Below, in pieces: positions 15,460-64,000 of a stretch of DNA of 64,000 bases. Within the stretch, counting starts at the first letter, position 1. Each line of letters opens with the position of its first letter. The translations under genes were made by a program, and so were the position numbers. Source of the stretch: Macrostomum lignano (Eukaryota); assembly GCA_002269645.1 (NCBI GenBank), contig NIVC01000261.1, forward strand, positions 186,001 to 250,000, read 5' to 3'. The notes below the pieces were generated by a model. It did not search any database and was not told where the DNA came from. It saw only the letters and a program-made list of their open reading frames with translations.

Positions 15460-19860
<4,401 letters not shown>

Positions 19861-35475: not shown

Positions 35476-38400
35476 ATGCTGACGAATCGACTGATTTTAC
35501 TCGCCGTTCTGATCGGGTGAGGGTTGACAAATACTTACGATTTTGGCTTCAATATACGCTAAAACTAATCAATATTATCATTATATACTAATATATACCT
35601 AAAGAAACATTTCGTTTTTAGAATATTTAGTTACTTAGTTAGTCAGTTAGTTAGTCAGTTAGTCAGTTAGTTAGTTAGTCAGTTAGTTAGTCAGTTAGTT
35701 AGTTAGTTACTCAGTTAGCCAGTTAGCTAGTTCCATGGGTACCACAGCACCGCAAATTCTAAAATCCTTCCCACAGCGGCTGTCTCGGCTTCAATGAGAC
35801 AGACAGTTTGTTTGACATCGGCGGAGACGATCTGAATTTTGTCGATTCGCCAACGTCAATGCGCGACAATTTCCAATACGCCGAGACCGACATCCTCGAG
35901 GAGCTGTACAATACGACTCGAGTGACCAAGCGGTCTACTCGATCTAACCTGTGCACCTATCAGAGAAGCGAGACGCAATATTATCGATCGTACGAACGAT
36001 TGCCGCGTTGTTTTTGCTATTGCTTATTTGTCTAGACACGTTGCACTTTTACTAATTATGCATTTGTTGAAATTTCACAAAACAGACGGGGCAGCTGGTG
36101 GCGGAGACGGAAGAACTCTCGAACGGTTTTAGTCAATTATCAGGACTGCTGTCCCGGTTGGAGTCGCTATACTGGAGAGCCGTCCTGTCTACGCGGTGAG
36201 CGTATCTACGAGTAGAATATTCACGTCTGGGTTTCGGTCAGAAGACTTTTATTTTCTTCTGTAGCAAACGAAACTTGACCTACAGATTTCTAGATTTCTG
36301 TACTGGCCGGGTAATTTTAGGGTAAACTGGTGTTCTAGATTTTGCTGCCCCTCTTTCTTTTATTGTTGGAAGCAAGCGCAATTAAACGTTTTCCAAAGCA
36401 ATGAACAGATAGTCAAGCAAATATCTTGTCAATTAGAAAAGTTCAAGGTTTATTCAAGTTTTTCAGCCATATGTTAGGCCAAATTGGGATTAACGAAGAA
36501 TTGTTTTACCTGGATGCAGTATGCAGGTCATTAGAGTCAAGCCTTACTAATTCTTGCCGTTGATACATTTTTAAGTAACCAAAATAGTAATAATAAAACA
36601 TTGGTCATTGTTCATGAACTTGTTCAAGTTCTATCCATGTTAGGTAATAAATACTTTTATATTCTAAATCGAAAGATATTGAAAGTACATAACGCACTAC
36701 TGTGCCCAGTAGTCAATGTCTCTAATCTAAACTGCCTTATCTATTCCAGCAATCTGCTTCGGCCGCCTGCAGTACTGCCCCAATGGCGGCTCTTGCAACA
36801 GTCCGGACTTCTGCTCCAACTGCAATCCGACTCACTACAGTCCCCGCTGCGACTGTGAGTGGTGGCTCATAGCTTGTGTAAAGCTTCATTTAAAAGTCAC
36901 AGAAACGTGCATGCAGAGACATACGATTCGTACGTAAACCCAATTTCAGTGTGTCCACAAGTTCCGTTCTGCGCGCTGACTTACTGCACGCATTTGCCGA
37001 GCGCGATAGAGACGATGACCTGCCAGATTTGCATGTTCGATCACGGACCAAAGGGTCAGGCGTACAAGCTCAGTAGCGATCGGAAGGCTTGCATTGGTGA
37101 GTTAAAATTAGGCCTCAATTTCACGGCTCAACCATGAGCTTGTTGTAACAAACTGAACATTGAGGGGACCTTTGGAGAGCTGCCAAAGAGTGAGACAGCA
37201 AGTATCTGATACGGTACTTTGATTGCGCTGAGTCCTGAGCACATATGAGACATACCTATAGTGGCACGTGCTCATACAGGCTGTTACAACTGCCAAGACT
37301 TTCTCTGTCGTGAACACTGTCTGTGCCTTGAGGTTTCGCCATCGTGATCCTTGTATGGAAAAAAGCGAAAGTCACGTCTTAACACCTGAGCTACTCTGCC
37401 CCCTCCTGAGAAGAGACCCTCTAGTTCGGTCTGACTCTTTGGGCTCGGATAAGTTCCGTGTGGAGTTCCCACCTATAGGTAATAGTTTACCAAAGCCTAA
37501 GACAAACATTTGAGGGTTAAAATAAAGTCGTCATAGATTCGAATTAAACTGCAGAAACCTGCTCGTGGAGGCGAGAGCACAACCTGTGCTTTCCAGGCGT
37601 GTGCAACGGGTATCACACGGAGTGCCAGTGCGATGCCGGCTTCACATCGACACCTGGAGCGAGGGACTGTCTAAAAAGTAAACAAACCACAATGAGACAA
37701 CCTGGATTTGCAGAATTGAAACATAAAAAAAGATTCATCTTGGATATACTAGCATACCGTATTGACTTTCAGTTGTCACGAAGCCAACGGTACTGACTGC
37801 GACAATGACAGTGAGAATTCCTCCGGATGGAACCAGTAGGTAGATGCCTGGAGCCTTAGAAATTCATAGTTTTTTTAAGATATAAAATTTCCTAACGATT
37901 TTTTCAGCACCGAAGGACGATGTTACAATTGACTTCCATAAATCACCAAACTCGGTGAACTATATTAATACTAAACCAGGTGAGTGATCCAAAACAATAG
38001 CCATCTGATAGCCATACGCTAATGCAGTTATTTTTCACTGAAATATTCACCTTGTCAGCTCCAAACAGGAAAATCCAGCTTGAGTGGACAGCAACAAGCC
38101 GCTTCAAGCCCACAATATCCAGTCCGGGTCCTCGCGAACACTTCATCCCACCGTCCGGTTACAAGATCGGCCTTGTGCGAGAAAATTTCGTTTTCGTGCT
38201 GTCCGGAAACCGTGAGTTTCACACACGTGGACATACAGTACCTAGCTATACTTTCGGCTAGGTAAGCTTAGTGCCGCATCTTCATTGCAGAGAATTTTCC
38301 CGACAACTCGATCGGTCCTCTGGAAGAGACTGGGATCAGTCCGTCTAACCCGAAGCTCGCAGAACGCGCCTTTACCGGACAGCTGAACCAGCTGCCTCCG

Positions 38401-41400
38401 GCCGGCTGGCAGCTGCAGTCCGGACACTCGCTCAAGTACACGTACTCGGTGTACAACGGCGGCTTCGTCACTGTCGCTGACCTCGACGCCAGAGGAGCCA
38501 CGCATCCGAGATTTCTCACCGGAGAGTCGTTTACTCAGGCTGGAACATTCGTGTTTGACTACAGCCTGCCGTACCACTGCACAGTGGCGGGACACGGAGC
38601 TCGACCCTGCACTCAGCCATTCGACCAGCGAATGCTTGAGCTTAGCGAAGCCTTCACCAAGCAGGTATGAGCTTGAAATGACATGATTTTCATCGTTGAA
38701 ACACATCTAAGAATGCGCTAACGTACTTTTATAGAATCAAATCAACGGTAAATTCGGAGGCTGGAGAGACGATCACGCTGGAGTGCTGCAGTACGACATT
38801 GAGCTCAAGCTCATGCACAAAGTCGGAGAGGTGCTGAAGGAGAACGAGATGGCGGGCTCTGAGCACAAAATCATTGATTTGAATGGCGAGGGCGAGGAAG
38901 AGAGACGAAATGGCGGAAACGAGAGTTCAGTGTTCACTTTGACTTGCCTCCCGACGAGCCGTCGGTCTACACTGTTGTGGTGACGGTGCGCGATGCGGTC
39001 AGGAACTCGATCAAGAATGTGAGACGCAGCAGACGCTTCTTTATCTTTGATAACTCGTCGAGCGTGGAAAGCAGGGACGAGCGCTATCCTCTCGGTGTAG
39101 ACGATACCGTCAACAATAGAGGACTGTGGTGGCTTCGACGGCTTGACGGAGACGTCGCGTTCCGATGGACGGACAACCTGATCAACGAGGTGCACACAGG
39201 TCAAGGCTTTCTGCTACCGATCGAGCATGTGCCGGAGTTCTACGGTGACGGCTACGATCAGACTTCCGGACCTCGGAGCATCCACCCAATCGACAATGTG
39301 CACGGAGTCGTGCACTTCGCGTCCCAGTTCGGAGTGGACGCGGTCGGTGGTCGCAGTCTGCAACAGCCGGATCAAAGCCGGTGGCTCATTACCACCGACA
39401 TTCACGCCCAGATGCAGAGCTTTCGCTTCGATAGACGAGACGGCGAGTCAGCAAAGTTCTGGGTGATTGGCGAGGATGTGATGGGCAACAGCCGTGTGAA
39501 CAGCTTCCTCATGCACATCGACTCCTCACCTGCCGAGTTAGGGACGCTCAGTCTGACTAACAGAGGCGTCGATGGGCTCGTTGTGCACCACAGCAGAGAC
39601 CTACACAGTTTGAGGTGAGTCCGTTTGAATGCAAAAACTGCTGATATGGACTCGAGTGCCATGACATTTTTGCCCGTTTGTAGAGCTCACTGGACCGCGT
39701 CCGACTTGCACAGCGGCTTGCACACTGTGCTCTGGGAGATCTTCGACAACCACACTGACGAGATTGTGCAGATGTACTACAACATGGAAGGACGGAGACA
39801 TTTCGATAGTCTTACGGTAAGAAAGCTTATTAAAAAATGACTGTAGAAACAGGCAAATGATTTGTAAGTGCCGGATTGCTTCCAGCTGTGCCAAAGAGAT
39901 TCCGAGAGACCAGACAACTGCTACTGCACTCAAGCTACTGGCTGCTACAACTCATTCTTTGCGGCATCGCCAAACACAAATGCCACAACGGAGCACAACC
40001 ACGATTTGCACATTCGACTCACAGTTACAAACGGAGCGGAGTTGGTCGCGAGCAGCGTGATGAAGATTAGCATCGATTTGTCTGCTCCTCATCCTGGCCA
40101 CGTGTTCGACGGCGCGCCTGGCGATGAAGAGGTCGACTTCCAGAACGGGCGACACCTAACGGCGCACTGGAGCGGCTTCTTTGATCCCGAGAGCGGAGTC
40201 GAATGTACAGATACGGCTTCGGAGTATCCTGTCAGTCAGAGTCGCAACTCATCCAAGAGACGACGGGTCTTGAGGCGAGCTGGGAGGCTCCTGGTCCTGG
40301 TCGGTACTTCGTCACGGTAGCCGCTTTCAATAACGCGATGGAGCCATCTGCCGCTGTGTGCTCTGACGGAGTCCTGATCACGGATCAAAGGCCAGAAGTG
40401 AGCCAGTTGAGCATCGAGAGTCTTCGAGTCCGTCCAGGACTCATCCTGGACGCCAGCTCGCAGGAGCTCTGGTACCTGACCGACCTTGGTCGCAGACAGA
40501 AACTTCTAAACGTTAACGAGACGTGCAGGTAGAGCCAACAGTCTGCTAATTAGCTCCTGTGATCAGAGGTCGTTAATAATGGAAGCGTCTCTTTTTCAGA
40601 GCTCGAGCAACCGTGATGGCGGACAGTGGAGTTCTGGCACTTGATCTCAGCAAGTTCAATCGCACTGTAGTGCTCACTCACGAAGGAGAGTTCTGTGAGC
40701 AAATCGGACCAGCTGGAACGAGTTCTATCTCACCAAGGACGACAGGGTAAGGCGCGTGTATTGCTGAGTATTTTTGAGAAGAAGCTTCTTATCAGAGAGC
40801 AGGCACTGCATTTCAGCTGAAACTAAGCTGGATTGCCTCCGACAGTGTTTCCGGACTGAGGCACTCCATCGTGTCAGTAGTGAGCAACGAGAACTCCGTG
40901 TCTGATCTTGCCAATCGCGTAGTCACGACACACTCTAGCGAAATTCTCGACCACATTGATTTGAAAGATGGTCAGCAGATCTACTTGACAATAGCGGCAG
41001 TAAACAGGGCGGGACTGTCGTCAAACATGGTGAGATTTACACTGCAACTTATCTAGACTGCTTGCTATGAAACGGTGAATGTTTGTTCGTATCATTTTAG
41101 AGTGTCGGACCACTGACTGTAGATACCAGTCCACCGAGCTTCTCGGGCTCATTGTCCGTCAGTACCAACAATGAGCACTTGTTAGTCCGTTGGGATGCCG
41201 GCGACTTCGTAGATCCGGAGTCCGAGTCGCTCGAGTTTGAGCTCGGAGTCGGTTAGTAAATCTGTTATCTCATCCAGGACATTAAGGCCAAGCTGTTGCT
41301 CAATTTCCTTGTTTTAATTTTATAGGCAGCAAGGAGCACTCTACAGACATTGTTCATTTCGAGAGAGTCAAGCAAGGACCTGAGTGCAGTCACAGTCACA

Positions 41401-44400
41401 CGCCAGTGACTTGCGCGTCTCTGGAGCTGAGCCAGCTTGACTGGAGTTTAATCGGCGATCACACATACTACGTGTCCATCCGATGCACCAATGAAGCTCA
41501 GCTAAGAACTGTTGCATTCGCTGAGCCAATTGTACATAACAACCGACTTCCCAGTGTCGGTTTCGTTACTGACGAGGATCCGAGTATCGACTCGGACTCA
41601 ATGCTCGGGGTAAAGTGTACTTGATAGCCTAAAGATACCAGTTGTGTATTTTTAGCGTGAATTCTGAGTACACGAACAAAACACTGACATTCTCAATTTT
41701 AGACACCACACGACATTCAGTATCAGCTGCGATCGGACTCGCTAAGGTCGCGATGGACCGGATTCAAATTCGCAAACGAGTTCCATGTTTCGGTTGTGGA
41801 TTCTCAGCACAAGGAGCTCGCATCTGTGACCCTCCCTTCAAATGCAACTCGACATCAGTTTGACGGACTCAAGTTGGATGTATTCAAGGCAAGCTTATAC
41901 ACAGTCGTTCGATTCAGACTCGAAATGGTTTCATTCATTGAAATTATGTCTCTTCTGTTTGAATACGCTTCAGACCTACTTTACTCGAGTAACAGCATCG
42001 AATGTGGTCGGAAGCGTCTCTGCAGGGTCAAGCGGGGTGACTGTCGAGTCTCGAGAGCCCCTCCTCGAGTTGAGACCTGTGAACTGGAGACCCGACAATG
42101 ATGGGTCGCTGACGAATGATTTCCAAAGCTCTTTGTCCACGGTTGGTTTGAAGTGGACAAAGCCGAAATCACCCCTCGATCTGCTGTTTCACGACGTCAG
42201 TTGGGGTCTCGAGTTGAAGCGAGGAGACGGTACGGTAGAAAACTCATTTCTCCTTGTTTATCTGCAAGTAGACTGAGTTGCTTCCCGTGTTGACCCACTC
42301 GCTTTAGATTGGATCACAGTGGAAGAGTTTAGACGCGTCTCGCACTCGGGCGAGACGGTCCTCGTCACGAATTTGCACCTCATCGATGGGGCCACTTACC
42401 GATCGCGAATGAAGCTCTGTCATGGTGAAGTTTGCTCAGAGGTCGAGACTGCTCCAGACTTTGTGGTCCTGCACACTTCCCCAGTGGCTGGAGCGTGGAG
42501 TGTCAATCTTGAAGCTGACAACCAGACAGTATGCTGAACAACATACTCTGTTACAAATGCATTTATTGCGTCTAAACAATAATATTTTCTTTTGTTTTCA
42601 GATCACAGTGCAGATGGACGAGTTCAAGCAGCTAGGATCAGCAGGAAGCAGTGTTATCAGCGGATACCAGTGGTCATTGCAACACGATGGTGCCAACATC
42701 GTACAATGGACGGAATTGAAACTCGATTCGAGTAACTCGGTAGGTGGCTGCTTCACTTGAAACAATGAAACAATGGTGGTATGTAGCTACCTCCTAATTT
42801 GACTATCTATACTTTAGACTAAATCTATATCTCTACCGTGGCCTCTGAAATCGACGAAATGCATCCGTTTTGCGATTCGCTGCTTCAACAAGGCAGGCCT
42901 GTCGACTGTAGACAGTAGAGAGCTGAGAGACTGCAGCGCGTACGACCCGAAGCTGATAAGTAATCCGAACGTGATGGACGCGATCGGGCCAGTGAAGCTT
43001 GAGAAAAATGACCAATGGACAGCAGATGACGTGGACTACTCAAACTCGAGCGCTCGACTTGCAGCGGTGTGGCCCCAGCTGAGATATTTGGTGAGAGAAC
43101 AGGCTGCCATAAGAAACAAGCTTTTAAAAGCATACATGCATGGTTACCAAAATAGGATATAATCCTTACAGAACTACGAATGGGCTGTTCTAGCAGCCAG
43201 TGGGACCGGAGGCTCCGGTTACTATGACCGAATTCTGCTTGAGCCGCCAAAACGGCCGACGAGTCACGCGAATGCGATCGCAGGCGGCTTTACTCGGGAT
43301 GAGTTCGTAACGTTCCCGGAGTTCAGCTTCAACCAGGGACTCGGTATCACGTGTGCATTCACGCTAACGAAACTTTGCTGCAATTTGAGAAGTTCACTCA
43401 GCTGTTGCCTGAGTTAAGCGAGTGCAGCGATGGTGTCACTGTGCTTGGAGATGTAGCAACCGAGGGCAGGATCGCAGTGAATGGACGATTTGCCAATCAG
43501 ATGCTGGTAAGTTGAATGTCGATTTTGCAGTAAGTTTTACAAAGTAGATGTTTTAATGAATTCATTCATTGTTTGCAGTCATCTGTGACTGAGTTTCTTC
43601 TCGAGTGGTCAGGATTCGAGTCTGGAACGTCTACGGACATGCCGCACGTGACTGACATAAAGTACTACGAATACTGCATTGGATCATTCGCCTCCGGTTG
43701 CGACCTAATCGATTGGAAAAACGTCGGCGGTGCTCGCAGTGTGATTGTTACTCAGCTCAAGGGAGTCCTTCAGGAAGGTCACGTCTACTTTGTCTCGGTG
43801 AGAGGTAAGTGAAGAATTGAATTTCGCAAATAAACTACTGAGCTTCTATTGACTTGTGCCTTATGCTCCAGCTGTCGACTTCATCGGTCGCGAGAGTCGG
43901 TCAAAGCCCCGGTCGGTCCGAGTGGTGCTGCACGGTCCTAAGTCCAATCACTCAGCAGCTATCTCTGTGGGTCTGCGGCATGTAATCTCGAACAACAATG
44001 GCCAAGAAGTGTGCTGGAACGGTAGATTCTCTGACCCCGTCGCGGGCATTCGTCGCTACTGGGTCGGTCTCGGATCTTCGCCCGGTCGTCCTGATGTCAT
44101 TCCGTACACTGAATCAGATGGCGAGTGTGTTTGGTGGACAACCAAGCAGCTGTCATACTCCAGAGACGGACAGCACTACTGGGTGCTGCTGAGAGCTGAG
44201 AACTTTGCCGGACTTATATCGAGCGACCACTCGAAGCCAGTGCTCGTAGACAGAAGTCCACCAGTAGCTGGATCGGTGATCGATATCGACCCGACCGTAT
44301 CAAACAGCACCGATTGCAACTTTCGGTTCAATATGGACGGCATCTCAGCAAAATGGACCGACTTCCATGATCCTCACAGTCACGTGAGGGACTATTCGGT

Positions 44401-50930: not shown

Positions 50931-50959
50931 ACTTGGGTTTGGAACTGGCCTTATTCGCG

Positions 50960-53085: not shown

Positions 53086-53355
53086 TGTTTAGGAGTTGGC
53101 TTACATGTACGAGTGTACTTTTCATTCACCTACGCGTAACTTTCATAGCAGAGATTTTGATACGTACGTTTCAGCCCCAGCCCCCATTTATAATGTTCAG
53201 CAGCACCCACCCCATTTATTTAAAATTATTGCAATATATAGTTATCAGCCTCTCCAGAGAGAGTGCGCACGCTGGTTGTTTTGTTCGGTTGGCTAGTAGC
53301 CGAAAAATAGTCGCTTACTGCGAAGACTCAATTTATTGAATGAACCATCAAAACA
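53086..53355 (+). repeat. 5' LTR (270 bp)
   Basis: TGTTTAGGAG...CATCAAAACA, followed by the PBS. Confidence 0.97.
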
Positions 53356-53417
53356 TCTGGTAGCAGAGCGTGGTTCTACTTGTGGTTCTACTTGTGGTTC
53401 TACTTCATTGGTAAAAG

Positions 53418-53858: not shown

Positions 53859-56800
53859 CGGAGGCAGAGTACATGACAGTAGCGTGTGAGGCGGTAAGAG
53901 GCGTGGCTTCTTCCGGTGAGACCGGACGGCACGACAGTGTAAAAGCCAAGAAAACTGTTTCCCGAGGGGCAGCCGCAGCACGCTCGTTTTTTGTGAAGAC
54001 GAATGATTCGAATAGCCAAAACAAAGAACAGGCGGAAGGGCGAAAAGGTTGTGGTCTCTGCGGAGAACAGCACGGAGTTTGGAGCTGCCCAAGGTTTCAA
54101 CGAATGGAACCTGGAGCCAGATGGGCGACGGTTCGTGACAAGCGCCTGTGCTTCTGCTGCTTGGGAGCAAACCATCTAGCCGGTGCGTGCAAGCGAGCGA
54201 GAGTGTGCGGTGTTGATGGCTGCAAAGCAAACCATAATCGGCTGCTGCATCAACGAGGGCCGGCGGCGACAACGGCGAATCCGCATGAAGGGGGGTCGCC
54301 CAAAACGATCGAAAGACCAAAGTCCTTCCAGGAGAAGAAGAGCACAGTTCAAGAGCCGCAAGAGGCATGCACTTTACTGGCCAGAACATCGCCGTCAATA
54401 GCGCTGAGGACTGTGCCCGTGATTTTATCCAACGGCGGTCGGGAAGTCCGAGTGAATGTCTTGCTGGACGACGCTAGCACCCGGTCGTACCTGAACTCTG
54501 ACGTTGCAGCGGAACTCGGCTTGGAAGGCAACCTCGAACCGATGACGGTAAAGGTTCTGAACGGCCAGGTGAGCACCTTTCAGACGGTTCCGGTTGAGGT
54601 CGACATCCGCAGTCTGGACGGCGCCTTTCGTGCCACAGTTACGGCCCACACAACTGAGAAAGTGACCGGTGGGATGGAAGCCGTAGATTGGAGCCAGCTT
54701 GCAAAGCGTTGGGCTCATCTGAGGGGCGTGCCGTTCGACAAAATTAAAGGGAAGCAGACTGTGGATATGCTCATTGGTGTGGACAATGCAGACTTGCACT
54801 TTGCCTGTCGCGAAGTAGGTGGGCAACCTGGAGAGCCGATTGCCAGACTGACGCCAATTGGGTGGACCTGCGTTGGACCAGTGAATCAAGTAGGAACTGC
54901 AGAAGAGCAGCAGCAGCAGACATTCTTTACGGTGACGGCGGAGAACGAGGCATCTGATCTTCTGCGGAAGATGTGGGAGATCGATGAAGTGCCAGATGGA
55001 GGACAGCAGGCCAGAATGTCCGCTGAAGATCAAAAGATCGTAGAAGCGACACGAGCATCCTTGAAGATGGAGAACGGCAGGTTTCAAGTGGCGATTCCTT
55101 GGAAAAAGAATCCGGAAGAACTACCTATGAACAACGAAGCTGCCCTACAGCGTCTCGTCAGCACAGAAAAGCGCTTGCTGAAGAACCCGGAGCTAGCGAA
55201 GGCGTACCAGGCTGTGATAGACAAGCATCTGGCAAAAGGCTATGTGCGGGAGGTCGGCATCAGCGAGCCAAGTCAGGCTGGCCAGTGGTTCTTGCCGCAT
55301 TTCGCGATAGTGCGGGCCGATAAGGAGACGACCAAAGTTCGAATTGTGTTTGATGCAGCGGCTCGGAGCAATGGGGTCTGCCTAAATGACACCATTCATA
55401 CGGGACCGAAGTTGCAGCAGGATTTGCTAAAGGTGCTCCTACGGTTCCGGAAGCATCCCGTGGCGCTAGCAGCCGACATCGAGGAGATGTATCTGAGAGT
55501 TCGAATTGCGCCGGAGGACAGAAGATTTTTCCGATTTCTGTGGCGAGACTTAGACTTGAAGCAAACGCCGAAGAGCTATGAGTTCTGCAGTGTGGTATTT
55601 GGCGTAAACTGCTCTCCGTTTCTGGCTCAGTTTGTGGCACAGGAGAATGCGCGACACTATCAGCAACAGCTGCCGCTGGCGGCCAACACCGTGCTGCATT
55701 CCACTTATATGGACGACAGTCTAGACTCCGTAGAAACCGTTGGCCAAGCGGTGAAACTCTTCCAACAACTCGTAGAATTATGGAGCAAGGCAGGGATGCG
55801 AGCTTGCAAATGGATGTCGAATTCGTTAGAAGTGCTGCAACACGTTCCAGTCGAGGACCGCGCAGAACGCGCCGAGTTGCTATTGAAAGGTGAGGCCCGA
55901 ACCGCTAAGGCGCTTGGAGTGAATTGGAATGCGAAAGAGGACGTCCTAGGAATTTCCATCAGCGAGTCGAATGCTAGCGGCAAGGTGATGACGAAGAGAC
56001 TGCTTTTGCGCGGTGTGGCCGAGGTGTTTGACCCCTGTGGCTTCCTAGCTCCGGTAGTTATCACAGGAAAGATAATGCTGCAGTTGGCATGGCAACAAGG
56101 TGTTGGGTGGGATGAAGCGTTGGATCCTGAGTTGGCTGATCAAGCGTTTCAGTGGACCAGTGAGCTCTCCAAAGCTACGAGACTAGCCGTGCCTCGGTGT
56201 CTGCGTCCAGACAACGGATCCATCGAACTTCACTCGTTTGTAGACGCATCGCAAGAGGCCTACGGAGCCGTCGTATATCTGCGGAGCGAAACGATGAGTA
56301 AGACGACGGTCCGTTTCGTTGCTGCAAAGGCTAAGGTAGCACCATTGATGGCGGTGAGCATCCCTCGACTGGAGTTGATGGCGGCAGTCCTAGGACTTCG
56401 GCTCGCAAGGGCAGTGGCCGAGGCGTTGGAGATCGCGATTGAGTCTGTGGTGTTTTGGAGTGACAGTCACAATGTGCTTTGGTGGATTCGCAGGCAGAGT
56501 AGAGCGTTCAAGCCTTTCGTTGCGAACCGAGTCGCCTTCATCCAGCAGCAGGTGCAGCCAAATCAATGGCGGTACGTTCCAACAGGTCTGAATCCAGCGG
56601 ATGTGGCATCCCGTGGCTGCAGTGTGCAAGAGCTGATGGACAACGAGCTGTGGTGGAACGGCCCTGGATTCTTGGCGAGGTGCTCAAACGATTGGCCAGA
56701 AATGCCGATTCCAGTTGCGCCAGAAACTACTGAGGCGAATACCCGTCGAAGAGAGCTAGCAAGCATCCAGAAGCGTTGTGCAGAGCCCGTATGTCTGGTC

Positions 56801-58270
56801 ACCACCGATGAAGAAGACAAGACAGGCTGGCGACTCAAACCAGAGCGATTCTCTAGTTTCCATCGACTGCAGCGCGTCTTCGCTTGGGTGTTGCGGTTCA
56901 TTCGGAACTGTCAGACGGAGAAGTATCAGCGGAGCGGCGGTGAGCTGTTGGTGGATGAGCTCGAGGAGGTCGAGGAGCGTTTGGTAAGGTTAGCTCAGGA
57001 GGAAGCGTTCAAGACGGATACAGTGAACGAGAAGAAGCTGCGGTGCTTGCAGCCGGTACGTGATGCAGCAGGAGTCCTACGAGTGGATGGCCGGTTGAAA
57101 TTCAGGCCACAGGCGCCATTTGCAGCAAGACATCCATCTATTTTGCCGCGGAAGCATTGGATCACCAAGCTGATCATCAAACAATATCACGAGCAGCAGA
57201 GCCATGGTGGGACTAACCAAACTCTGGCGGCGCTGTCAGCCAAGTATTGGGTTATCTGTGCTCGGGAAGCTATTCGCGAGTGGGAGGTTGAATGCGCTGT
57301 GTGCAAGAGAGAGAAAGCTCGTCCCATCGTACAACAGATGGCGCCACTGCCTGATGCCCGTGTCGCAGGATCCTTAAAAGCCTTCACGAACGTAGCCGTC
57401 GACATGGGAGGGCCGTTCGTCACTATTCAAGGCCGATTTAAGAAGAGGCAGAAACGCTATTTGGCGCTGTTCACATGCCTCGAGACGCGAGCGGTACACC
57501 TCGAGATGACCTACAGCCTTGACGCGGACTCTTTCTTGAACGCCTTCTACCGAATGGTGAACAGGCGTGGCTTACCCAAGGCTATGTATTCTGACAACGG
57601 TGGCAACTTTGTAAAAGGTGCAGATGAACTGCGACTTCTGGAGGAGCTGGACAGGACAAGGATCAGTCGCGAGACATCCAAGCAGCGAGTCAAGTGGAAC
57701 TTCCAGCCGCCAGCCGCCCCGCACTTTGGTGGAGCCCACGAGGTGATGATTCGGGCTGCGAAGCGAGCGCTACACGCGATTCTGGGCAGCGCAGATGTCA
57801 CCGACGAGGAGCTTCAGTCAGCGATCACTGGAGCGGAGGCGCTTATCAACTCGCGCCCCATCACCTATCAATCGGCGAATCCGAGAGACGAAGAGCCACT
57901 AACGCCAAACCATTTCCTGCACGGTCAAGCTGGTGGACAATTCGCGCCAGATGTGCCCGACGACGTCGCGGCTGACCCGAGGCGGCGGTGGCGGCGCGTC
58001 CAAGAACTCGTGAGGCACGTCTGGCGACGCTGGATGCGCGAATGGCTGCCAGGGTTGCAGCCGAGAGCCAAGTGGGCGGGACCGCAGCGTGATTTACAGC
58101 CAGGTGATGTCGTTCTCGTCATCAAAGCAGACTCACCGCGGGGACACTGGCCGTTGGGACGAGTAGTCGAAGTCTACCCAGGTTCAGACAATCGAGTCCG
58201 GGTGGCCAAGGTCCAGGTCGGTGGGACGGTATTCGTGCGGCCTGTGAGCAAACTGTGCTATCTCGAGTGA
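53822..58270 (+). CDS. pol: BEL/Pao Gag C-terminus and Pol (Zn knuckles, aspartic protease, RT, Pao RNase H, integrase, C-terminal DUF5641-like region)
   Basis: Three Cys/His knuckles (CGLCGEQHGVWSC, CFCCLGANHLAGAC, CGVDGCKANH), LLDDAS protease, YMDD RT, FVDASQEAYGAVVY, H..H/CAVC Zn finger, VDMGGP / SDNGGNF / PHFGGAHE integrase, WRRWMREWL; uninterrupted ORF of about 1480 aa with no ATG of its own at the 5' end. Confidence 0.95.
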   Translation, partial: EDSLRTLHRWLLTEAEYMTVACEAVRGVASSGETGRHDSVKAKKTVSRGAAAARSFFVKTNDSNSQNKEQAEGRKGCGLCGEQHGVWSCPRFQRMEPGARWATVRDKRLCFCCLGANHLAGACKRARVCGVDGCKANHNRLLHQRGPAATTANPHEGGSPKTIERPKSFQEKKSTVQEPQEACTLLARTSPSIALRTVPVILSNGGREVRVNVLLDDASTRSYLNSDVAAELGLEGNLEPMTVKVLNGQVSTFQTVPVEVDIRSLDGAFRATVTAHTTEKVTGGMEAVDWSQLAKRWAHLRGVPFDKIKGKQTVDMLIGVDNADLHFACREVGGQPGEPIARLTPIGWTCVGPVNQVGTAEEQQQQTFFTVTAENEASDLLRKMWEIDEVPDGGQQARMSAEDQKIVEATRASLKMENGRFQVAIPWKKNPEELPMNNEAALQRLVSTEKRLLKNPELAKAYQAVIDKHLAKGYVREVGISEPSQAGQWFLPHFAIVRADKETTKVRIVFDAAARSNGVCLNDTIHTGPKLQQDLLKVLLRFRKHPVALAADIEEMYLRVRIAPEDRRFFRFLWRDLDLKQTPKSYEFCSVVFGVNCSPFLAQFVAQENARHYQQQLPLAANTVLHSTYMDDSLDSVETVGQAVKLFQQLVELWSKAGMRACKWMSNSLEVLQHVPVEDRAERAELLLKGEARTAKALGVNWNAKEDVLGISISESNASGKVMTKRLLLRGVAEVFDPCGFLAPVVITGKIMLQLAWQQGVGWDEALDPELADQAFQWTSELSKATRLAVPRCLRPDNGSIELHSFVDASQEAYGAVVYLRSETMSKTTVRFVAAKAKVAPLMAVSIPRLELMAAVLGLRLARAVAEALEIAIESVVFWSDSHNVLWWIRRQSRAFKPFVANRVAFIQQQVQPNQWRYVPTGLNPADVASRGCSVQELMDNELWWNGPGFLARCSNDWPEMPIPVAPETTEANTRRRELASIQKRCAEPVCLVTTDEEDKTGWRLKPERFSSFHRLQRVFAWVLRFIRNCQTEKYQRSGGELLVDELEEVEERLVRLAQEEAFKTDTVNEKKLRCLQPVRDAAGVLRVDGRLKFRPQAPFAARHPSILPRKHWITKLIIKQYHEQQSHGGTNQTLAALSAKYWVICAREAIREWEVECAVCKREKARPIVQQMAPLPDARVAGSLKAFTNVAVDMGGPFVTIQGRFKKRQKRYLALFTCLETRAVHLEMTYSLDADSFLNAFYRMVNRRGLPKAMYSDNGGNFVKGADELRLLEELDRTRISRETSKQRVKWNFQPPAAPHFGGAHEVMIRAAKRALHAILGSADVTDEELQSAITGAEALINSRPITYQSANPRDEEPLTPNHFLHGQAGGQFAPDVPDDVAADPRRRWRRVQELVRHVWRRWMREWLPGLQPRAKWAGPQRDLQPGDVVLVIKADSPRGHWPLGRVVEVYPGSDNRVRVAKVQVGGTVFVRPVSKLCYLE

Positions 58271-58876
58271 GAGGAGTTGATCATTTGCTTAAGAACTGTT
58301 TGTTTTCTTTTCCGGACTTTTCCGAGTTTACGCTGAGTTTTCAAATTGTTTGTACTGTATCGTGTGCGTTCAGTAGGCTTTCTGCCAGTTTTGGGCTTTT
58401 CAAGCCGTTGCCTTTTTGATTATTTGTTGTGTCTGTTTTTGTTCATGGTTTTTTTTGGGATCAGATTTTTTTGGAGCGCAGTTGGCGCATTTGTTTTTCC
58501 TTTGAGTTTGAGCTGTTTGAAGTTTCTGTTAAGTTACGGTGATGGGTTTTTTCTGTCAACCATTTTCGACTTTATTAAAATTGCGAGTTAAGCTGAGTTG
58601 CAAATTTTTATATTTTTTGATGTTTAGTGGTAACTTATTTCAGTTTGCGGTCTTGCGCATTTTCATTGTTTTCATTTGCGAGTCTTGGTGGCGGGTGCCG
58701 AAACATCTTTTCAGTTTGGCTTTTGAGCTCTTTTGAGCCCTCACGCTTCTCGTGCTGTTCCCAGGCGTTGTATGTTTTTTTTGCTATGGTCATAGTTTGT
58801 CCGTTCGGTTACTAGGTACTCAAGTTCAGTGTTTCCGGTCTTTGTTGCTGACATTGCTCTGTCAGGAAGGGGGGAA

Positions 58877-59146
58877 TGTTTAGGAGTTGGCTTACATGTA
58901 CGAGTGTACTTTTCATTCACCTACGCGTAACTTTCATAGCAGAGATTTTGATACGTACGTTTCAGCCCCAGCCCCCATTTATAATGTTCAGCAGCACCCA
59001 CCCCATTTATTTAAAATTATTGCAATATATAGTTATCAGCCTCTCCAGAGAGAGTGCGCACGCTGGTTGTTTTGTTCGGTTGGCTAGTAGCCGAAAAATA
59101 GTCGCTTACTGCGAAGACTCAATTTATTGAATGAACCATCAAAACA
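58877..59146 (+). repeat. 3' LTR (270 bp)
   Basis: Preceded by the PPT and followed by the TSD; no differences seen versus the 5' LTR. Confidence 0.97.
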
Positions 59147-59151
59147 TTTGC

Positions 59152-62100
59152 GAGTTCTCTAGAACTGAGAAGCAGAGCTATCGAGAGTAAGTTTTTTAAC
59201 TCCTTAGCTTTTAAGTTTTTAAACATAATTTGGGATTGCTAAAAGCCTCCGCTCGCAAAGGGCATTACATTAATCACCTTTACAACTTTTAGTCGTCGCT
59301 GGACTCGTCTGTGGATTAGAAGGAAGAAGACGCGCGACATTGAAGTCAAATACCACGACTGCTGCCCGGGATGGGCCAGAGGAGTTTTCGGCTGCACACT
59401 AGGTGAGTGTGCATCCCAACGAACTACGAGCGGACTCGTATAACAGAGCTCTCACAACCCAAAACATGTCTAAAGCTTCATAATTACTCAGGCAGATCAC
59501 AGAGGACTGTGAGCGCTTTTGTAAATAAAGGTGACAGTGATCCCCGCTTACCCTCCTCTGGTCCTCCATTGTAATTTCAATCATTACTGTGCCTCAACAA
59601 GGATTGCTTTGCTTCTTTCACACCAGCTATTTGCTTCGGTAGAGTTAATCACTGTCCGAACAACGGCAAATGCATCAGGCCGAACTTTTGCTCCAACTGC
59701 GACCCCACGCACTATAGCCCTCGCTGCGACCGTGAGTTTGAGGTTCAATATTGATCGCATTGAGTAATGCATTAATTCCTCTATAAGAATTATCGTTAAT
59801 GCTTCACCACCAACATGACTTTCAGTGTGTCCGAAGATTCCATTTTGTGCATTAACGCACTGTTATCATCTTCCGGACCCTTGGGAGACAGCGCGATGCC
59901 AAATTTGCAAGTATAACCACGGACCCAAGGGTCAAGCGTATCTGCTTAGCAGAGACAATAAAACTTGCATTGGTGCGTATTGATTTGAATGAATCTCATG
60001 ATAAATAAAATGTTTCGTGTTGGGGTTACAGTAAATTGCAAGCAAACAATGGACCTGCAATACTATGACAATATATCAGTATCATTAAAATACCGGTTCG
60101 GCTTTACATCATTATCAGAGACTTGCTCATGGAGACGGGAGCACAACCTGTGCTTTCCCGGCGTTTGCAATGGGCCGCACTCACAGTGCCGCTGTGATTC
60201 AGATTTCACCTCGACACCCACAGCAAAAAATTGTCTTAAAAGTGAGTGGGAAATATTGTGTCTCTGTTATTACTTAGTATACAATATCGACTACTAATTG
60301 ATAGTAAAAATTTTTAGTCAAGACTAAGCCTTCGGTGCTGATGGCATCAATGACAGTAAGGGTTCATCCTGACGGAGCGGGTAAGTTCTATAGAAAGAAT
60401 TAAGATTGCTCGTACTTTCATTCCTAAAAATGCTAAAGAAGAATTATTTTAATTTACAGCACCAAAAGACCATGTTACGATCGACTTTCATAAGTTTCCT
60501 AACACTGTGGACTACATTAAAACGAAGCCAGGTAATATTTTGCACGCATATAAAATGCAAAATACTTATTACGAGTGTAATCACAATGAGATTAAAAACC
60601 GTTTAAACATTTCAGCGATAAATAAAAAACTTCAGTTTGAGTGGACAGCGACCAGCCGATTCAAGCCCACAATATCCAGTCCGGGTCTTTCACGCGAACA
60701 CTTCATCCCGCCCACCGGTTACAAGATCGGCCTTGTGCGGGAAAATTTCGTTTTCGTGCTGTCCGGAAACCGTGAGTTTCACACACGTGGACATACAGTA
60801 CCTAGCTATACTTACGGCTAGGTAAGCTTAGTGCCGCATCTTCATTGCAGAGAACTTTCCCGACAACTTGATCGGTCCTCTGGAAGAGACTGGGATCAGT
60901 CCGTCTAACCCGAAGCTCGCAGAACGCGCCTTTACCGGACAGCTGAACCAGCTGCCTCCGGCCGGCTGGCAGCTGCAGTCCGGACACTCGCTCAAGTACA
61001 CGTACTCGGTGTACAACGGTGGCTTCGTCACTGTCGCTGACCTCGACGCCAGAGGAGCCACGCATCCGAGATTTCTCACCGGAGAGTCGTTTACTCAGGC
61101 TGGAACATTCGTGTTTGACTACAGCCTGCCGTACCACTGCACAGTGGCGGGACACGGAGCTCGACCCTGCACTCAGCCATTCGACCAGCGAATGCTTGAG
61201 CTTAGCGAAGCCTTCACCAAGCAGGTATGAGGCTTGAAATGACATGATTTTCATCGTTGAAACACATCTAAGAATGCGCTAACGTACTTTTGATAGAATC
61301 AAATCAACGGTAAATTCGGAGGCTGGAGAGACGACCACGCTGGAGTGCTGCAGTACGACATTGAGCTCAAGCTCATGCACAAAGTCGGAGAGGTGCTGAA
61401 GGAGAACGAGATGGCGGGCTCTGAGCACAAAATCATTGATTTGAATGGCGAGAGCGAGGAAGAGAGACGAAATGGCGGAAACCGAGAGTTCAGTGTTCAC
61501 TTTGACTTGCCTCCCGACGAGCCGTCGGTCTACACTGTTGTGGTGACGGTGCGCGATGCGGTCAGGAACTCGATCAAGAATGTGAGACGCAGCAGACGCT
61601 TCTTTATCTTTGATAACTCGTCGAGCGTGGAAAGCAGGGACGAGCGCTATCCTCTCGGTGTAGACGATACCGTCAACAATAGAGGACTGTGGTGGCTTCG
61701 ACGGCTTGACGGAGACGTCGCGTTCCGATGGACGGACAACCTGATCAACGAGGTGCACACAGGTCAAGGCTTTCTGCTACCGATCGAGCATGTGCCGGAG
61801 TTCTACGGTGACGGCTACGATCAGACTTCCGGACCTCGGAGCATCCACCCGATCGACAACGTGCACGGAGTTGTGCGCTTCGCGTCCCAGTTCGGAGTGG
61901 ACGCGGTCGGTGGTCGCAGTCTGCAACAGCCGGATCAAAGCCGGTGGCTCACCACCACCGACATTCACGCCCAGATGCAGAGCTTTCGCTTCGATAGACG
62001 AGACGGCGAGTCAGCAAAGTTCTGGGTGATTGGCGAGGATGTGATGGGCAACAGCCGTGTGAACAGCTTCCTCATGCACATTGACTCTTCACCTGCCGAG

Positions 62101-64000
62101 TTAGGGACGCTCAGTCTGACTAACAGAGGCGTCGAGGGGCTCGTTGTGCACCACAGCAGAGACCTACACAGTTTGAGGTGAGTCCGTTTGAATGCAAAAA
62201 CTGCTGATATGGACTCGAGTGCCATGACATTTTTGCCCCGTTTGTAGAGCTCACTGGACCGCGTCCGACTTGCACAGCGGCTTGCACACTGTGCTGTGGG
62301 AGATCTTCGACAACCACACTGACGAGATTGTGCAGATGTACTCCAACATGGAAGGACGGAGACATTTCGACAGTCTTACGGTAAGAAAGCTTATTAAAAA
62401 ATGACTGTAGGCAAATGATTGTAAAGTGCCGGATTGCTTCCAGCTGTGCCAAAGAGATTCCGAGAGACCAGACAACTGCTACTGCACTCAAGCTACTGGC
62501 TGCTACAACTCATTCTTTGCGGCATCGCCAAACACAAATGCCACAACGGAGCACAACCACGATTTGCACATTCGACTCACAGTTACAAACGGAGCGGAGT
62601 TGGTCGCGAGCAGCGTGATGAAGATTAGCATCGATTTGTCTGCTCCTCATCCTGGCCACGTGTTCGACGGCGCGCCTGGCGATGAAGAGGTCGACTTCCA
62701 GAACGGGCGACACCTAACGGCGCACTGGAGCGGCTTCTTTGATCCCGAGAGCGGAGTCCGAATGTACAGATACGGCTTCGGAGTATCCTGTCAGTCAGAG
62801 TCGCAACTCATCCAAGAGACGACGGGTCTTGAGGCGAGCTGGGAGGCTCCTGGTCCTGGTCGGTACTTCGTCACGGTAGTCGCTTTCAACAACGCGATGG
62901 AGCCATCTGCCGCTGTGTGCTCTGACGGAGTCCTGATCACGGATCAAAGGCCAGAAGTGAGCCAGTTGAGCATCGAGAGTCTTCGAGTCCGTCCAGGACT
63001 CATCCTGGACGCAAGCTCGCAGGAGCTCTGGTACCTGACCGACCTTGGTCGCAGACAGAAACTTCTAAACGATAATGAGACGTGCAGGTAGAGCCAACAG
63101 TCTGCTAATTAGACCCCCTTGCTACGAGCTCCTTAATAATGGAAAGCATCTCTTTTTCAGAGCTCGAGCAACCGTGATGGCGGACAGCGGAGTTCTGGCA
63201 CTTGATCTCAGCAAGTTCAATCGCACTGTAGTGCTCACTCACGAAGGAGAGTTCTGTGAGCAAATCGGACCAGCTGGAACTGAGTTCTATCTCACCAAGG
63301 ACGACAGGGTAAGGCGCGTGTATTGCTGAGTATTTTTGAGAAGAAGCTTCTTATCAGAGAGCAGGCACTGCATTTCAGCTGAAACTAAGCTGGATTGCCT
63401 CCGACAGTGTTTCCGGACTGAGGCACTCCATCGTGTCAGTAGTGAGCAACGAGAACTCCGTGTCTGATCTTGCCAATCGCGTAGTCACGACACACTCTAG
63501 CGAAATTCTCGACCACATTGATTTGAAAGATGGTCAGCAGATCTACTTGACAATAGCGGCAGTAAACAGGGCGGGACTGTCGTCAAACATGGTGAGATTT
63601 ACACTGCAACTTATCTAGACTGCTTGCTATGAAACGGTGAATGTTTGTTCGTATCATTTTAGAGTGTCGGACCACTGACTGTAGACACCAGTCCACCGAG
63701 CTTCTCGGGCTCATTGTCCGTCAGTACCAACAATGAGCACTTGTTAGTCCGTTGGGATGCGGGCGACTTCGTAGATCCGGAGTCCGAGTCGCTCGAGTTT
63801 GAGATCGGAGTCGGTTAGTGTCTGTCAATCTGTTATCTCATACTGGAGATTAAGGTAATGCATCGTTTAGTTCTCATGGTTTAATTTTATAGGCAGCAAG
63901 AAGCACTCTACAGACATTGTTCATTTCGAGAGGGTCAAGCAAGGACCTGAGTGCAGTCACAGTCACACGCCAGTGACTTGCGCATCTCTGGAGCTGAGCC
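59152..64000 (+). pseudogene. Paralog 2 of the giant secreted protein, exons 2b-17 (continues past the window)
   Basis: Exons 59152-59186, 59293-59402, 59627-59731, 59826-59972, 60119-60241, 60318-60380, 60460-60531, 60616-60771, 60851-61224, 61297-62177, 62248-62380, 62444-63087, 63161-63308, 63379-63591, 63663-63813, 63893-end. Same intron phases and nearly the same exon sizes as paralog 1; reading frame intact apart from the LTR insertion. Confidence 0.87.

What the first reader, a model, noticed from the sequence alone, without database searches (positions are those of the whole stretch)
35476..64000. Tandem giant secreted proteins with a divergent N-terminal head grafted onto a homogenised body (sharp identity break inside exon 9)
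By-eye alignment shows exons 1-8 are strongly diverged: exon 3 keeps little beyond the Cys frame (DCCPGW), exon 4 is 26/35 aa identical, exon 5 33/49, exon 6 32/41, and introns 1-8 do not align. From about 38105/60660 the copies become about 99% identical including introns (offset about 22.56 kb). Isolated diverged intron patches interrupt this (40550-40590 vs 63110-63150; 41255-41320 vs 63815-63885). This patchwork is typical of gene conversion or unequal crossover. A variable EMI/EGF tip on a constant stalk is the layout of diversified recognition or adhesion families, so this may be an undescribed variable-head secreted protein family (function is inference).
Basis: partly seen in the sequence, partly recalled or inferred. 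Interest (0 to 1): 0.72.

Follow-up and report, generated by a model that had tools for sequence, protein, structure and literature searches.

The report
Old gene heads, freshly homogenised bodies
Neighbouring copies of a giant extracellular-protein gene in the flatworm Macrostomum lignano keep ancient, different front ends, while the remaining 12 kb is kept almost identical by copy-correction between neighbours; this is a well-known process with an unusually clean boundary, and one copy is also broken by a young jumping gene.

Summary
The window is Macrostomum lignano contig NIVC01000261.1:186001-250000. It holds copy A (35476-49975, 35 exons, about 3,350 aa) and the start of copy B (from 52026). 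A third copy, C, follows outside the window.

- **Head versus body.** Exons 1-8 of A and B are 64-76% identical, their introns align no better than shuffled sequence, and synonymous sites are saturated (pS 0.68-0.78). From about 38076-38105 / 60633-60660, inside exon 9, to about 30 bp past the stop codon, the copies differ by about 1.1% (body pS 0.024).
- **Cause.** Interlocus gene conversion in an old tandem triplet fits best. A and C break at a different place (intron 3). Flanking spacers are not homologous. The body is a significant mosaic, and body similarity ignores head type.
- **Not supported.** There is no diversified variable-head family: only three head types were found, dN/dS is well below 1, and the head architecture is ancestral. 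The family is not an orphan either: uncharacterised orthologues of about 3,300 aa run from sponges to amphioxus.
A BEL/Pao LTR retrotransposon with identical LTRs sits inside coding exon 2 of B. Copy A carries about ten frameshifts, most of which look like PacBio consensus errors.

This is ordinary biology, cleanly displayed.

The parts
35476..49975 (+). Gene copy A: 35 exons, about 3,350 codons, ATG at 35476, stop at 49973-49975
   Evidence: Spliced protein-to-genome alignment of P0009 gives 3301/3322 identical residues. The cassette exon was added.
35476..37979 (+). Head of A, exons 1-8: 35476-35516, 35777-35989, 36086-36195 (CCPGW), 36750-36854, 36950-37096, 37555-37677, 37773-37835 (cassette), 37908-37979
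   Evidence: Identity to B is 64-76% at nucleotide level, and the introns are unalignable.
38059..38211 (+). Exon 9 of A. The A/B identity break lies at about 38076-38105, with a thin transition zone to about 38190.
38105..50004 (+). Homogenised tract of A: the rest of exon 9 through exon 35 and about 30 bp past the stop codon
   Evidence: 97.5-97.8% identity to B including gaps, and 98.9% counting substitutions only. The 3' end of the tract was located.
52026..52066 (+). Exon 1 of copy B (MWIARLFLLCCIF, 41 nt, same length and phase as in A)
52923..53085 (+). Exon 2 of B, 5' part, cut off by the retrotransposon
53086..59147 (+). BEL/Pao LTR retrotransposon inserted in coding exon 2 of B. LTRs lie at 53086-53356 and 58877-59147. 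The gag-like ORF is 53415-53855 and the pol ORF is 53723-58267. The target-site duplication TTGC (or TTTGC) lies at 53082-53085 and 59148-59151.
   Evidence: The LTRs are 271/271 identical. The flanks and TSD are shown. Pfam finds Peptidase_A17 (3.6e-48), DUF5641, RVT_1 and Integrase_H2C2.
59152..59186 (+). Exon 2 of B, 3' part. The empty-site reading ...RANLC|EFSRTEKQSYR matches A ...RSNLCTYQRSETQYYR.
59293..60531 (+). Head of B, exons 3-8: 59293-59402, 59627-59731, 59826-59972, 60119-60241, 60318-60380 (cassette), 60460-60531
60616..60771 (+). Exon 9 of B. The break lies at about 60633-60660.
60660..64000 (+). Homogenised body of B inside the window. Exons 10-16 lie at 60851-61224, 61297-62177, 62248-62380, 62444-63087, 63161-63308, 63379-63591 and 63663-63817. 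The reading frame is intact, and the tract continues to window-equivalent 72994.
40553..40587 (+). Diverged patch in intron 13 (B: 63113-63148). Two old haplotypes are shared among copies: A, C, D and F versus B and E, with G a hybrid.
41255..41312 (+). Diverged patch in intron 16 (B: 63818-63879). This version is private to A; the other six copies agree with each other.
38919..47663 (+). Eight single-base deletions in exons of A relative to the family consensus, at about 38921, 40198, 40718, 43307, 46888, 46953, 47286 and 47663. They are probably consensus errors of the assembly.
47797..47817 (+). Private 20-bp tandem duplication (with loss of 3 bp) in exon 32 of A. It shifts the frame and looks like a real mutation.
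44816..44880 (+). Cluster of private changes at the acceptor of exon 27 of A: -2, -4 (removes the AG), one TAG codon, and +2
49098..49419 (+). 18-bp minisatellite in intron 34 of A. It is not coding. It is about 1.2 kb in B and absent in C.

Best explanation
The locus is an old tandem triplet (A-B-C) of one gene in Macrostomum lignano.

**The protein.** It is a secreted, roughly 3,350-residue protein. It has a Cys-rich N-terminal head (EMI-like CCPGW motif plus EGF-like modules) followed by a rod of about 25-30 divergent FN3/Ig-like beta-sandwich domains. It belongs to an ancient, functionally uncharacterised metazoan family.

**Age of the copies.** They duplicated long ago. In the heads, synonymous sites between B and A/C are saturated, introns are unalignable, and the spacers are unrelated. 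A and C split later (dS 0.25 in exons 1-3).

**Homogenisation.** Since then, repeated non-reciprocal copying between neighbouring copies (interlocus gene conversion) has kept about 12 kb nearly identical. This tract runs from inside exon 9 to just past the stop codon. For the A/C pair it starts further upstream, in intron 3.

**Where tracts stop.** Conversion tracts stop where the partners are already too different to pair (inferred). This makes the boundary sharp and self-reinforcing.

**Selection.** Heads and bodies are both under purifying selection.

**State of the copies in this assembly.** Copy B has very recently been interrupted by a BEL/Pao retrotransposon in exon 2. Copy A carries many 1-nt deletions, which are mostly assembly errors, plus two or three lesions that look real.

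**Shown versus inferred.** Shown: the divergence contrast, the mosaic, the differing break points, the non-homologous flanks, the insertion with its TSD, and the orthologues. Inferred: the conversion mechanism itself, the cause of the boundary, secretion, and the extracellular structural or adhesive role.
For: 1. **Divergence contrast.**
   - Head A-B: pS 0.68-0.78, pN 0.16-0.32.
   - Body: pS A-B 0.024, A-C 0.034, B-C 0.031.
   - Introns 1-8 align no better than shuffled sequence, while intron 9 is 98.7% identical.
2. **Different boundaries in different pairs.** A/B breaks at 38076-38105. A/C breaks at about 36615 in intron 3. Copy D, the positional homeologue of B, is A-like already from 37890.
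3. **The tract ends about 30 bp after the stop codon, and the A-B and B-C spacers do not match.** This speaks against a recent segmental duplication.
4. **Mosaic body.**
   - The AB|C, AC|B and BC|A site patterns are heterogeneous along the gene (chi-square 83, df 20, p 1e-9).
   - A and B agree over 57 consecutive polymorphic sites at 46578-47554 (permutation p<=0.0005).
5. **Body similarity does not follow head type or position.**
   - Paralogues on one contig (pS 0.024-0.034) are as close as, or closer than, positional homeologues (A-F 0.026, B-D 0.036, C-E 0.043, C-G 0.041).
   - These values match the reported divergence of the three subgenomes: about 1.1% in CDS and 1.4-2.4% overall (PMC10733133).
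6. **Yardstick for no conversion.** A separate M. lignano paralogue locus (P0166) is 58-64% identical to the B and A heads and about 65% identical to the body. The A and B bodies are about 99.5% identical in protein.
7. **Purifying selection.** pN/pS is about 0.2 in the body. Private substitutions are A 10N:15S, B 8N:15S and C 15N:27S, against a neutral expectation of 3.2:1. The majority consensus of seven bodies is an open 2,945-codon frame.
8. **Independent copies of the junctions.** The junctions 'A head + body' and 'C head + body' also appear in proteins annotated on another assembly (P0009, P0012, P0016, P0010) and on other contigs (F, E).
9. **Protein nature.** There are full-length orthologues at 28-35% identity in 11 genera from Sycon to Branchiostoma. 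Pfam finds fn3 at E 5e-18. An AF2 model of exon 11 (pLDDT 86.9) folds as tandem beta-sandwiches, and its best matches are FN3 arrays and giant bacterial adhesins.
Against: - No sequencing reads could be examined. Mlig_3_7 is a PacBio/Canu assembly of a neopolyploid. In it, 93% of short-read pairs map to several places, and 36% of the assembly length lies in scaffolds that are chimeric between subgenomes (PMC5730564, PMC10733133). Part of the fine mosaic in the body could therefore be consensus mixing.
- The B-type head and its junction with the body are seen only on this contig.
- The within-array versus between-homeologue contrast is modest (pS 0.024-0.034 vs 0.026-0.043).
- No GC enrichment of the converted tract was seen: exons 0.545 vs 0.53, introns 0.371 vs 0.378. 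Biased gene conversion has therefore left no mark.
- Gene conversion and repeated unequal crossing-over cannot be fully separated from sequence alone.
Confidence: 0.75

Rival explanations
1. Assembly artefact. The head-body junctions, or the near-identity of the bodies, arise because the assembler joined or averaged reads from different paralogues or subgenomes of this neopolyploid genome.
For: - The assembly is known to be redundant and partly chimeric, and short-read polishing is hampered by multi-mapping.
- There are 49 private 1-nt deletions against 8 private 1-nt insertions, spread over all seven copies and over exons and introns alike. This shows that consensus errors are common here.
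- The B-type head is found on this contig only.
- Copy D abuts an inverted partial copy.
Against: - The A-type and C-type junctions recur in a second assembly's proteins and on other contigs.
- Each copy has its own spacers, insertions, minisatellite length and private substitutions, and those substitutions show a purifying-selection signature.
- B's 177-bp in-frame deletion is also present in ML2-derived proteins.
- Averaging of reads cannot create heads with saturated synonymous divergence and conserved exon structure.
- The retrotransposon has a clean target-site duplication.
Confidence: 0.08
2. Recent unequal crossing-over or segmental duplication. The bodies are alike because they were duplicated recently, and chimeric genes were formed by a crossover in exon 9 between old paralogues. 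On this view there has been no ongoing conversion.
For: - The break is sharp and falls in a conserved exon, where misaligned paralogues could pair.
- Tandem arrangement favours unequal exchange.
- Copy number and structure differ between homeologous arrays.
Against: - Homology ends about 30 bp after the stop codon, and the spacers are not duplicated.
- A/B and A/C have different 5' boundaries.
- The body is a patchwork of tracts with different nearest neighbours, rather than one block of uniform age.
- All three paralogue positions exist in homeologous contigs, so the array predates the subgenome split. Even so, paralogue bodies are no more diverged than homeologues.
Confidence: 0.1
3. Adaptive variable-head system. 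Selection diversifies the head for recognition or adhesion specificity, while the stalk is kept constant.
For: - Three head types sit on one body type.
- The heads are Cys-rich extracellular modules.
- Exons 1-3 show the highest pN (0.32) and the highest omega (A-C 0.43).
Against: - Only three head types were found, and A and C share exons 4-8.
- Omega is below 1 everywhere, and synonymous sites are saturated. The divergence therefore reflects age, not fast protein evolution.
- One head (B) is interrupted by a transposon.
- The head architecture is conserved across phyla.
Confidence: 0.07

Closest known systems
Partial interlocus gene conversion between tandem duplicates, for example the human fetal globin genes HBG1/HBG2, RHD/RHCE and CYP21A2/CYP21A1P (from my own knowledge of the literature; not tested here)
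   Same: Old tandem duplicates. Part of the gene is nearly identical, and the rest, with the flanks, is far more diverged. The boundary is sharp, the tracts form a mosaic, and paralogues are as alike as alleles or homeologues.
   Different: - The tract here is long (about 12 kb, 27 exons) and covers the 3' nine-tenths of a giant gene.
- Three copies have two different 5' boundaries.
- The setting is a neopolyploid flatworm with three subgenomes.
- No simple-sequence element was found at the boundary. It lies in a conserved exon.
Uncharacterised metazoan giant proteins of about 3,100-3,500 aa. Examples: Branchiostoma floridae LOC118405866 and LOC118415516, Acanthaster planci LOC110977889, Owenia fusiformis CAH1787741, Lineus longissimus LOC135497317, Sycon ciliatum LOC135808850.
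   Same: 28-35% identity along the whole first 1,200 residues, similar total length, the same order of Cys-rich head and beta-sandwich body, and the same D-x-S-P-P linker and W-x-G-F-x-D-x-x-S-G-I-x-x-Y motif.
   Different: - No function is known for any member.
- The amphioxus heads carry a fuller EMI-like Cys pattern than the flatworm ones.
- Whether the orthologues form tandem arrays with converted bodies was not examined.
EMI-domain/EGF extracellular proteins (EMILINs, multimerins, MEGF10/Draper)
   Same: N-terminal C...CCxGW...C motif followed by EGF-like Cys spacing, after a hydrophobic, signal-like N-terminus.
   Different: - There is no Pfam EMI or EGF match at E<=1.
- Only one Cys precedes the CC pair.
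- The rest of the protein is a long FN3-like array, with no gC1q, coiled coil or EGF array.
Clustered protocadherin / UGT1A type 'variable first exon, constant body' loci
   Same: Different N-terminal parts are combined with the same downstream sequence.
   Different: In those loci a single constant region is shared by splicing. Here each copy owns a full body, and sameness is maintained by DNA-level copying.
BEL/Pao LTR retrotransposons
   Same: LTRs, 4-5 bp TSD, Pao-type aspartic peptidase, RT, integrase and the DUF5641 tail.
   Different: Nothing unusual, apart from its position inside a coding exon.

Membership tests
Concerted evolution by interlocus gene conversion | Divergence between paralogues changes abruptly along the gene, by orders of magnitude at silent sites | tested here: met
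   pS is 0.68-0.78 in the head and 0.024-0.034 in the body. Introns 1-8 are unalignable, while intron 9 is 98.7% identical.
Concerted evolution by interlocus gene conversion | Paralogues within one genome or array are as similar as, or more similar than, positional orthologues or homeologues | tested here: met
   Within the contig, pS is 0.024-0.034. Between homeologues it is 0.026-0.043. Positions were assigned from flank homology. The margin is modest, and the subgenome assignment of the contigs is unknown.
Concerted evolution by interlocus gene conversion | Mosaic of tracts with conflicting nearest neighbours, beyond chance | tested here: met
   Chi-square heterogeneity p 1e-9. Longest-run permutation tests give p<=0.0005 for six pairs. 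Caveat: consensus mixing in the assembly could add to this signal.
Concerted evolution by interlocus gene conversion | Flanks outside the tract are not co-duplicated, which excludes a young segmental duplication | tested here: met
   Homology stops about 30 bp after the stop codon, and the spacers do not match.
Concerted evolution by interlocus gene conversion | In related species, the body clusters by species and the head clusters by paralogue | not testable with these tools
   No other Macrostomum genome was reachable.
Diversified variable-head recognition/adhesion family | Many distinct heads | tested here: not met
   Three head types were found among seven genomic copies and 15 protein models. 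A and C differ only in exons 1-3.
Diversified variable-head recognition/adhesion family | Excess of amino-acid change in the variable part (dN/dS > 1) | tested here: not met
   Omega is about 0.09-0.43. dS is saturated for the pairs that involve B.
EMI domain (Pfam PF07546) | Match to the family profile | tested here: not met
   No Pfam family matched either head at E<=1, and none matched the amphioxus or starfish orthologues. Only the CCPGW motif and its flanking Cys are present.
Fibronectin type III / Ig-like beta-sandwich arrays | Profile match and beta-sandwich fold | tested here: met
   Pfam fn3 at E 5e-18 at residues 2948-3020 of P0001. The AF2 model of exon 11 is all-beta, and its best matches are FN3 arrays and giant adhesins at E 2e-4 to 1e-3 with TM 0.23-0.35. 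Most repeats are too divergent for Pfam.
BEL/Pao LTR retrotransposon | Two LTRs, a target-site duplication, and Pao peptidase, RT and integrase in one element | tested here: met
Pseudogene (copy A) | Reading frame truly broken in the genome | tested here: inconclusive
   Eight 1-nt deletions fit the assembly's error spectrum. A 20-bp tandem duplication and an acceptor lesion look real. Intact A-type proteins exist in another assembly. Reads are needed to decide.

The most novel reading that the evidence does not exclude
Selection keeps the three heads as functionally distinct N-terminal modules, while conversion keeps one shared 12-kb rod. This would make a small 'interchangeable head' system in an ancient, still uncharacterised giant extracellular protein that runs from sponges to amphioxus and for which no vertebrate or ecdysozoan relative was seen among the 20 hits whose source organisms were looked up. 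The conversion boundary in exon 9 would then mark a functional module border.
Probability: 0.15. Interest if true: 0.5.

Novelty: new member of a known kind. Interest (0 to 1): 0.3.

Why it matters
- **A clean example.** The locus shows partial concerted evolution with three copies, two boundaries and an internal yardstick: a separate paralogue locus shows how far apart unconverted bodies would be. It could serve for studying how far conversion tracts run, and what stops them, in a recently polyploid animal genome.
- **Practical warnings for users of the M. lignano assembly.**
  - Near-identical paralogue bodies defeat read mapping and polishing, so frameshifts in such genes should not be read as pseudogenisation.
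  - RNA-seq or RNAi reagents aimed at the body will hit all copies. Only head exons are copy-specific.
- **An unstudied family.** The analysis also brings to light a large, conserved metazoan protein family that nobody has studied.

Tried and rejected
- **Word-index protein searches.** Exon 11 alone and the B head alone returned nothing. The full-length query returned only its own cluster. These searches also missed the 65% paralogue and the A-type heads, so their negatives say little. The exhaustive HMMER search then found 1,057 relatives.
- A 1,200-residue substring of P0001 was accepted instead.
- **My own splice-site and codon-usage gene finder.** It found most body exons but missed head exons and invented introns around frameshifts. 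I replaced it with a protein-to-genome alignment.
- **'Copy A is a decayed pseudogene'.** Largely rejected. Private 1-nt deletions occur in all seven copies (49 against 8 insertions) and hit exons and introns alike. Shared indels, in contrast, avoid exons (13 in introns, 1 in an exon). There is no excess of amino-acid changes on A's branch. Two or three larger lesions remain unexplained.
- **Positive selection on the head.** Rejected.
- **GC-biased conversion footprint.** Not seen.
- **Head of B imported from the second paralogue locus.** Rejected: the B head is only 58% identical to P0166.
- **Pfam EMI/EGF.** No match.
- **PDB sequence search.** No match.
- **Literature search for the gene identifiers.** Nothing found.

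Full report
**Where the window comes from.** The only close protein cluster for the gene consists of Macrostomum lignano proteins. Look-ups of two of them place the window at NIVC01000261.1:186001-250000 of assembly Mlig_3_7 (GCA_002269645.1). They also gave 37 kb of sequence beyond the window's end (L001 and L002). Mlig_3_7 is a PacBio/Canu assembly polished with Pilon (PMC5730564). The genome holds three subgenomes that differ by about 1.4-2.4% overall and about 1.1% in coding sequence. In this assembly 93% of read pairs map to several places, and 36% of the assembly length lies in scaffolds that are chimeric between subgenomes (PMC10733133). These facts frame everything below.

Self-comparison finds 38070-41433 matching 60626-64000 at 97.3%, and almost nothing upstream. 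I aligned the intact 3,349-residue protein P0009 to the DNA with a splice- and frameshift-aware alignment. I then added a conserved 63-nt cassette exon, seen in P0016 and present in both copies with good splice sites. This gives 35 exons for copy A (35476-49975). The head exons of copy B (start 52026) have the same lengths and phases, apart from exons 2 and 9.
- Exons 1-8 are 64-76% identical between A and B.
- Introns 1-8 align no better than shuffled sequence.
- Exon 9 is 87% identical, exon 10 is 99.2% and intron 9 is 98.7%.
- Differences fall from 24-29 per 40 columns to 0-2 within about 100 bp around 38076-38190.

**The wider locus.** With the extra sequence, the A/B near-identity runs for the whole remaining gene, 38070-49419 plus the last exon. 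It stops about 30 bp after the stop codon, and the spacers do not match. A third copy, C, follows B at window-equivalent 76783-94467. Against A, C is diverged only upstream of about 36615, in intron 3: exons 1-3 have dS 0.25. From there on it is 97-99% identical. So there are two different 5' boundaries in one array.

Three other contigs carry further copies. Flank homology identifies them as positional homeologues. F corresponds to A and has an A-type head. D corresponds to B; its head is missing, it sits next to an inverted partial copy, and it is A-like already from 37890. E and G correspond to C, and E has a C-type head.

**How old are the parts?**
- Between A and B, head synonymous sites are saturated (pS 0.68-0.78) while pN is 0.16-0.32. 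The divergence is therefore old and has been filtered by purifying selection.
- In the body, pS is 0.024 (A-B), 0.034 (A-C) and 0.031 (B-C). That is no more than between positional homeologues (0.026-0.043). pN/pS is about 0.2 throughout.
- A separate M. lignano paralogue locus (P0166/P0017) gives a yardstick. It is 58-64% identical to the B and A heads and about 65% identical to the body. Without homogenisation, the A and B bodies should by now be about as different as that. They are instead about 99.5% identical in protein.

**Evidence for conversion rather than one recent duplication.**
- The seven bodies share 350 polymorphic sites in 10,145 ungapped columns.
- Similarity ignores head type and position. 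The C-E pair is the most distant, while D-F and E-G are the closest.
- The three possible site patterns among A, B and C are strongly heterogeneous along the gene (p 1e-9).
- Several pairs show runs of agreement far longer than permutations give. For example, A and B agree over 57 polymorphic sites at 46578-47554.
- The patch at 40553-40587 consists of two old haplotypes distributed among copies. The patch at 41255-41312 is private to A.
- Taken with the non-homologous flanks and the differing boundaries, repeated interlocus gene conversion is the best account.
- I saw no GC enrichment of the tract.

**State of the copies.**
- **Copy B.** Its coding exon 2 is split by a 6,062-bp BEL/Pao LTR retrotransposon (53086-59147). 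The element has 271/271 identical LTRs and a TTGC/TTTGC target-site duplication. Its 1,515-codon pol frame is open and carries Pao peptidase, RT, integrase and DUF5641 domains. Removing the element and one TSD copy restores a reading frame that aligns with A. The insertion is therefore young. B also carries an in-frame 177-bp deletion outside the window, which recurs in proteins from the older ML2 assembly.
- **Copy A.** It has eight 1-nt deletions in exons relative to B and to the family consensus. I do not read these as decay, for the following reasons.
  - Across the seven copies there are 49 private 1-nt deletions against 8 private insertions.
  - Every copy has them.
  - They hit exons (3.9 per kb) and introns (7.2 per kb) alike.
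  - Indels shared by two or more copies avoid exons (13 in introns, 1 in an exon).
  - The majority consensus is an open 2,945-codon frame.
  - Private substitutions on A, B and C are mostly synonymous.
  - Intact A-type proteins exist in another assembly.

  This is the signature of consensus errors in a region where polishing fails.
- **Lesions that look real.** A's 20-bp tandem duplication in exon 32, A's damaged acceptor of exon 27, and a 16-nt exon deletion in C look like genuine mutations. Only reads can decide.

**What the protein is.**
- Pfam sees only one FN3 domain near the C-terminus and nothing in the heads.
- An exhaustive HMMER search found 1,057 relatives. They include full-length proteins of 3,100-3,500 residues at 28-35% identity over the whole 1,200-residue query. 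The organisms are Branchiostoma, Acanthaster, Amphiura, Anneissia, Saccoglossus, Ptychodera, Owenia, Lineus, Lottia, Haliotis and Sycon. All are annotated as uncharacterised.
- The N-termini of several of these orthologues align with flatworm exons 2-6; the amphioxus ones carry a fuller EMI-like Cys pattern followed by the same EGF-like modules. The head is therefore ancestral, not grafted.
- The body repeats share a D-x-S-P-P linker and a W-x-G-F-x-D-x-x-S-G-I-x-x-Y motif, which is the FN3 B-C region in divergent form.
- An AlphaFold model of exon 11 (pLDDT 86.9) is a string of beta-sandwiches. Its best matches are FN3 arrays and giant bacterial adhesins.
- No transmembrane segment follows the last domain (sequence).
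- I infer a secreted, rod-like matrix or adhesion protein. The function is untested in any species.

**Verdict.** The pattern is real and is a good example of partial concerted evolution. The variable-head family reading is not supported. The main uncertainty is assembly quality, above all for the B-type junction, which is seen only on this contig.

Noticed in passing
53086-59147: BEL/Pao LTR retrotransposon with 100% identical 271-bp LTRs and a 4-5 bp target-site duplication. It sits in the same orientation as the gene, inside coding exon 2 of copy B. The gag-like and pol frames overlap by about 130 nt with a -1 shift.
   Followed up: yes
15460-19861 and 35624-35732: A 4.4-kb (CTAA)n satellite. 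The same motif, in reverse complement, forms a 109-bp array in intron 1 of copy A.
   Followed up: partly
770-34963: About 20 separate micro- and minisatellite arrays (periods 4-90 bp, up to 1.7 kb each) fill much of the first 35 kb.
   Followed up: no
25183-26613 (-): Single-exon ORF of 476 aa with a rhodopsin-family 7TM match (Pfam 7tm_1, E 2e-15). It is probably a GPCR gene lying among the satellites.
   Followed up: partly
49098-49419: 18-bp minisatellite in intron 34 of copy A. It reads as NATANP repeats in one frame but is spliced out in the annotated proteins. It is about 1.2 kb in B and absent in C.
   Followed up: yes
37773-37835 and 60318-60380: 63-nt exon conserved in A and B (15/22 residues identical) with good splice sites. 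It is included in some protein models (P0016, P0166) and skipped in others, so it may be an alternative cassette exon.
   Followed up: partly
L001:26331-28186 and L002 (window-equivalent 76783-94467): Third tandem copy, C. It has a 3.9-kb insertion in intron 3. Its homeologue E (L003) has about 10 kb at the same place, partly the same sequence.
   Followed up: partly
L001:14244-14261 (window-equivalent about 64700): In-frame 177-bp deletion in copy B that removes intron 19 and 33 codons, fusing exons 19 and 20. The same junction appears in proteins from the ML2 assembly (P0011).
   Followed up: partly
L003:1-5476: An inverted partial gene copy (A-equivalent 45252-40597) abuts copy D, which lacks a head. 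This is either a rearrangement or a misjoin.
   Followed up: no
P0042, P0038, P0049, P0068 (hits): The body repeat also matches proteins with 17-25 repeats, one of them from a bacterial source (an Acidimicrobiia MAG) and others from metagenomes. The domain type is therefore not confined to animals.
   Followed up: no
P0024 residues 2838-2994; A about 47300-47700: The amphioxus orthologue has a near-threshold DUF642 (carbohydrate-binding-like) match in the region that corresponds to the 'NPSFEEG...' segment of the flatworm protein. The flatworm protein itself has no Pfam match there.
   Followed up: no
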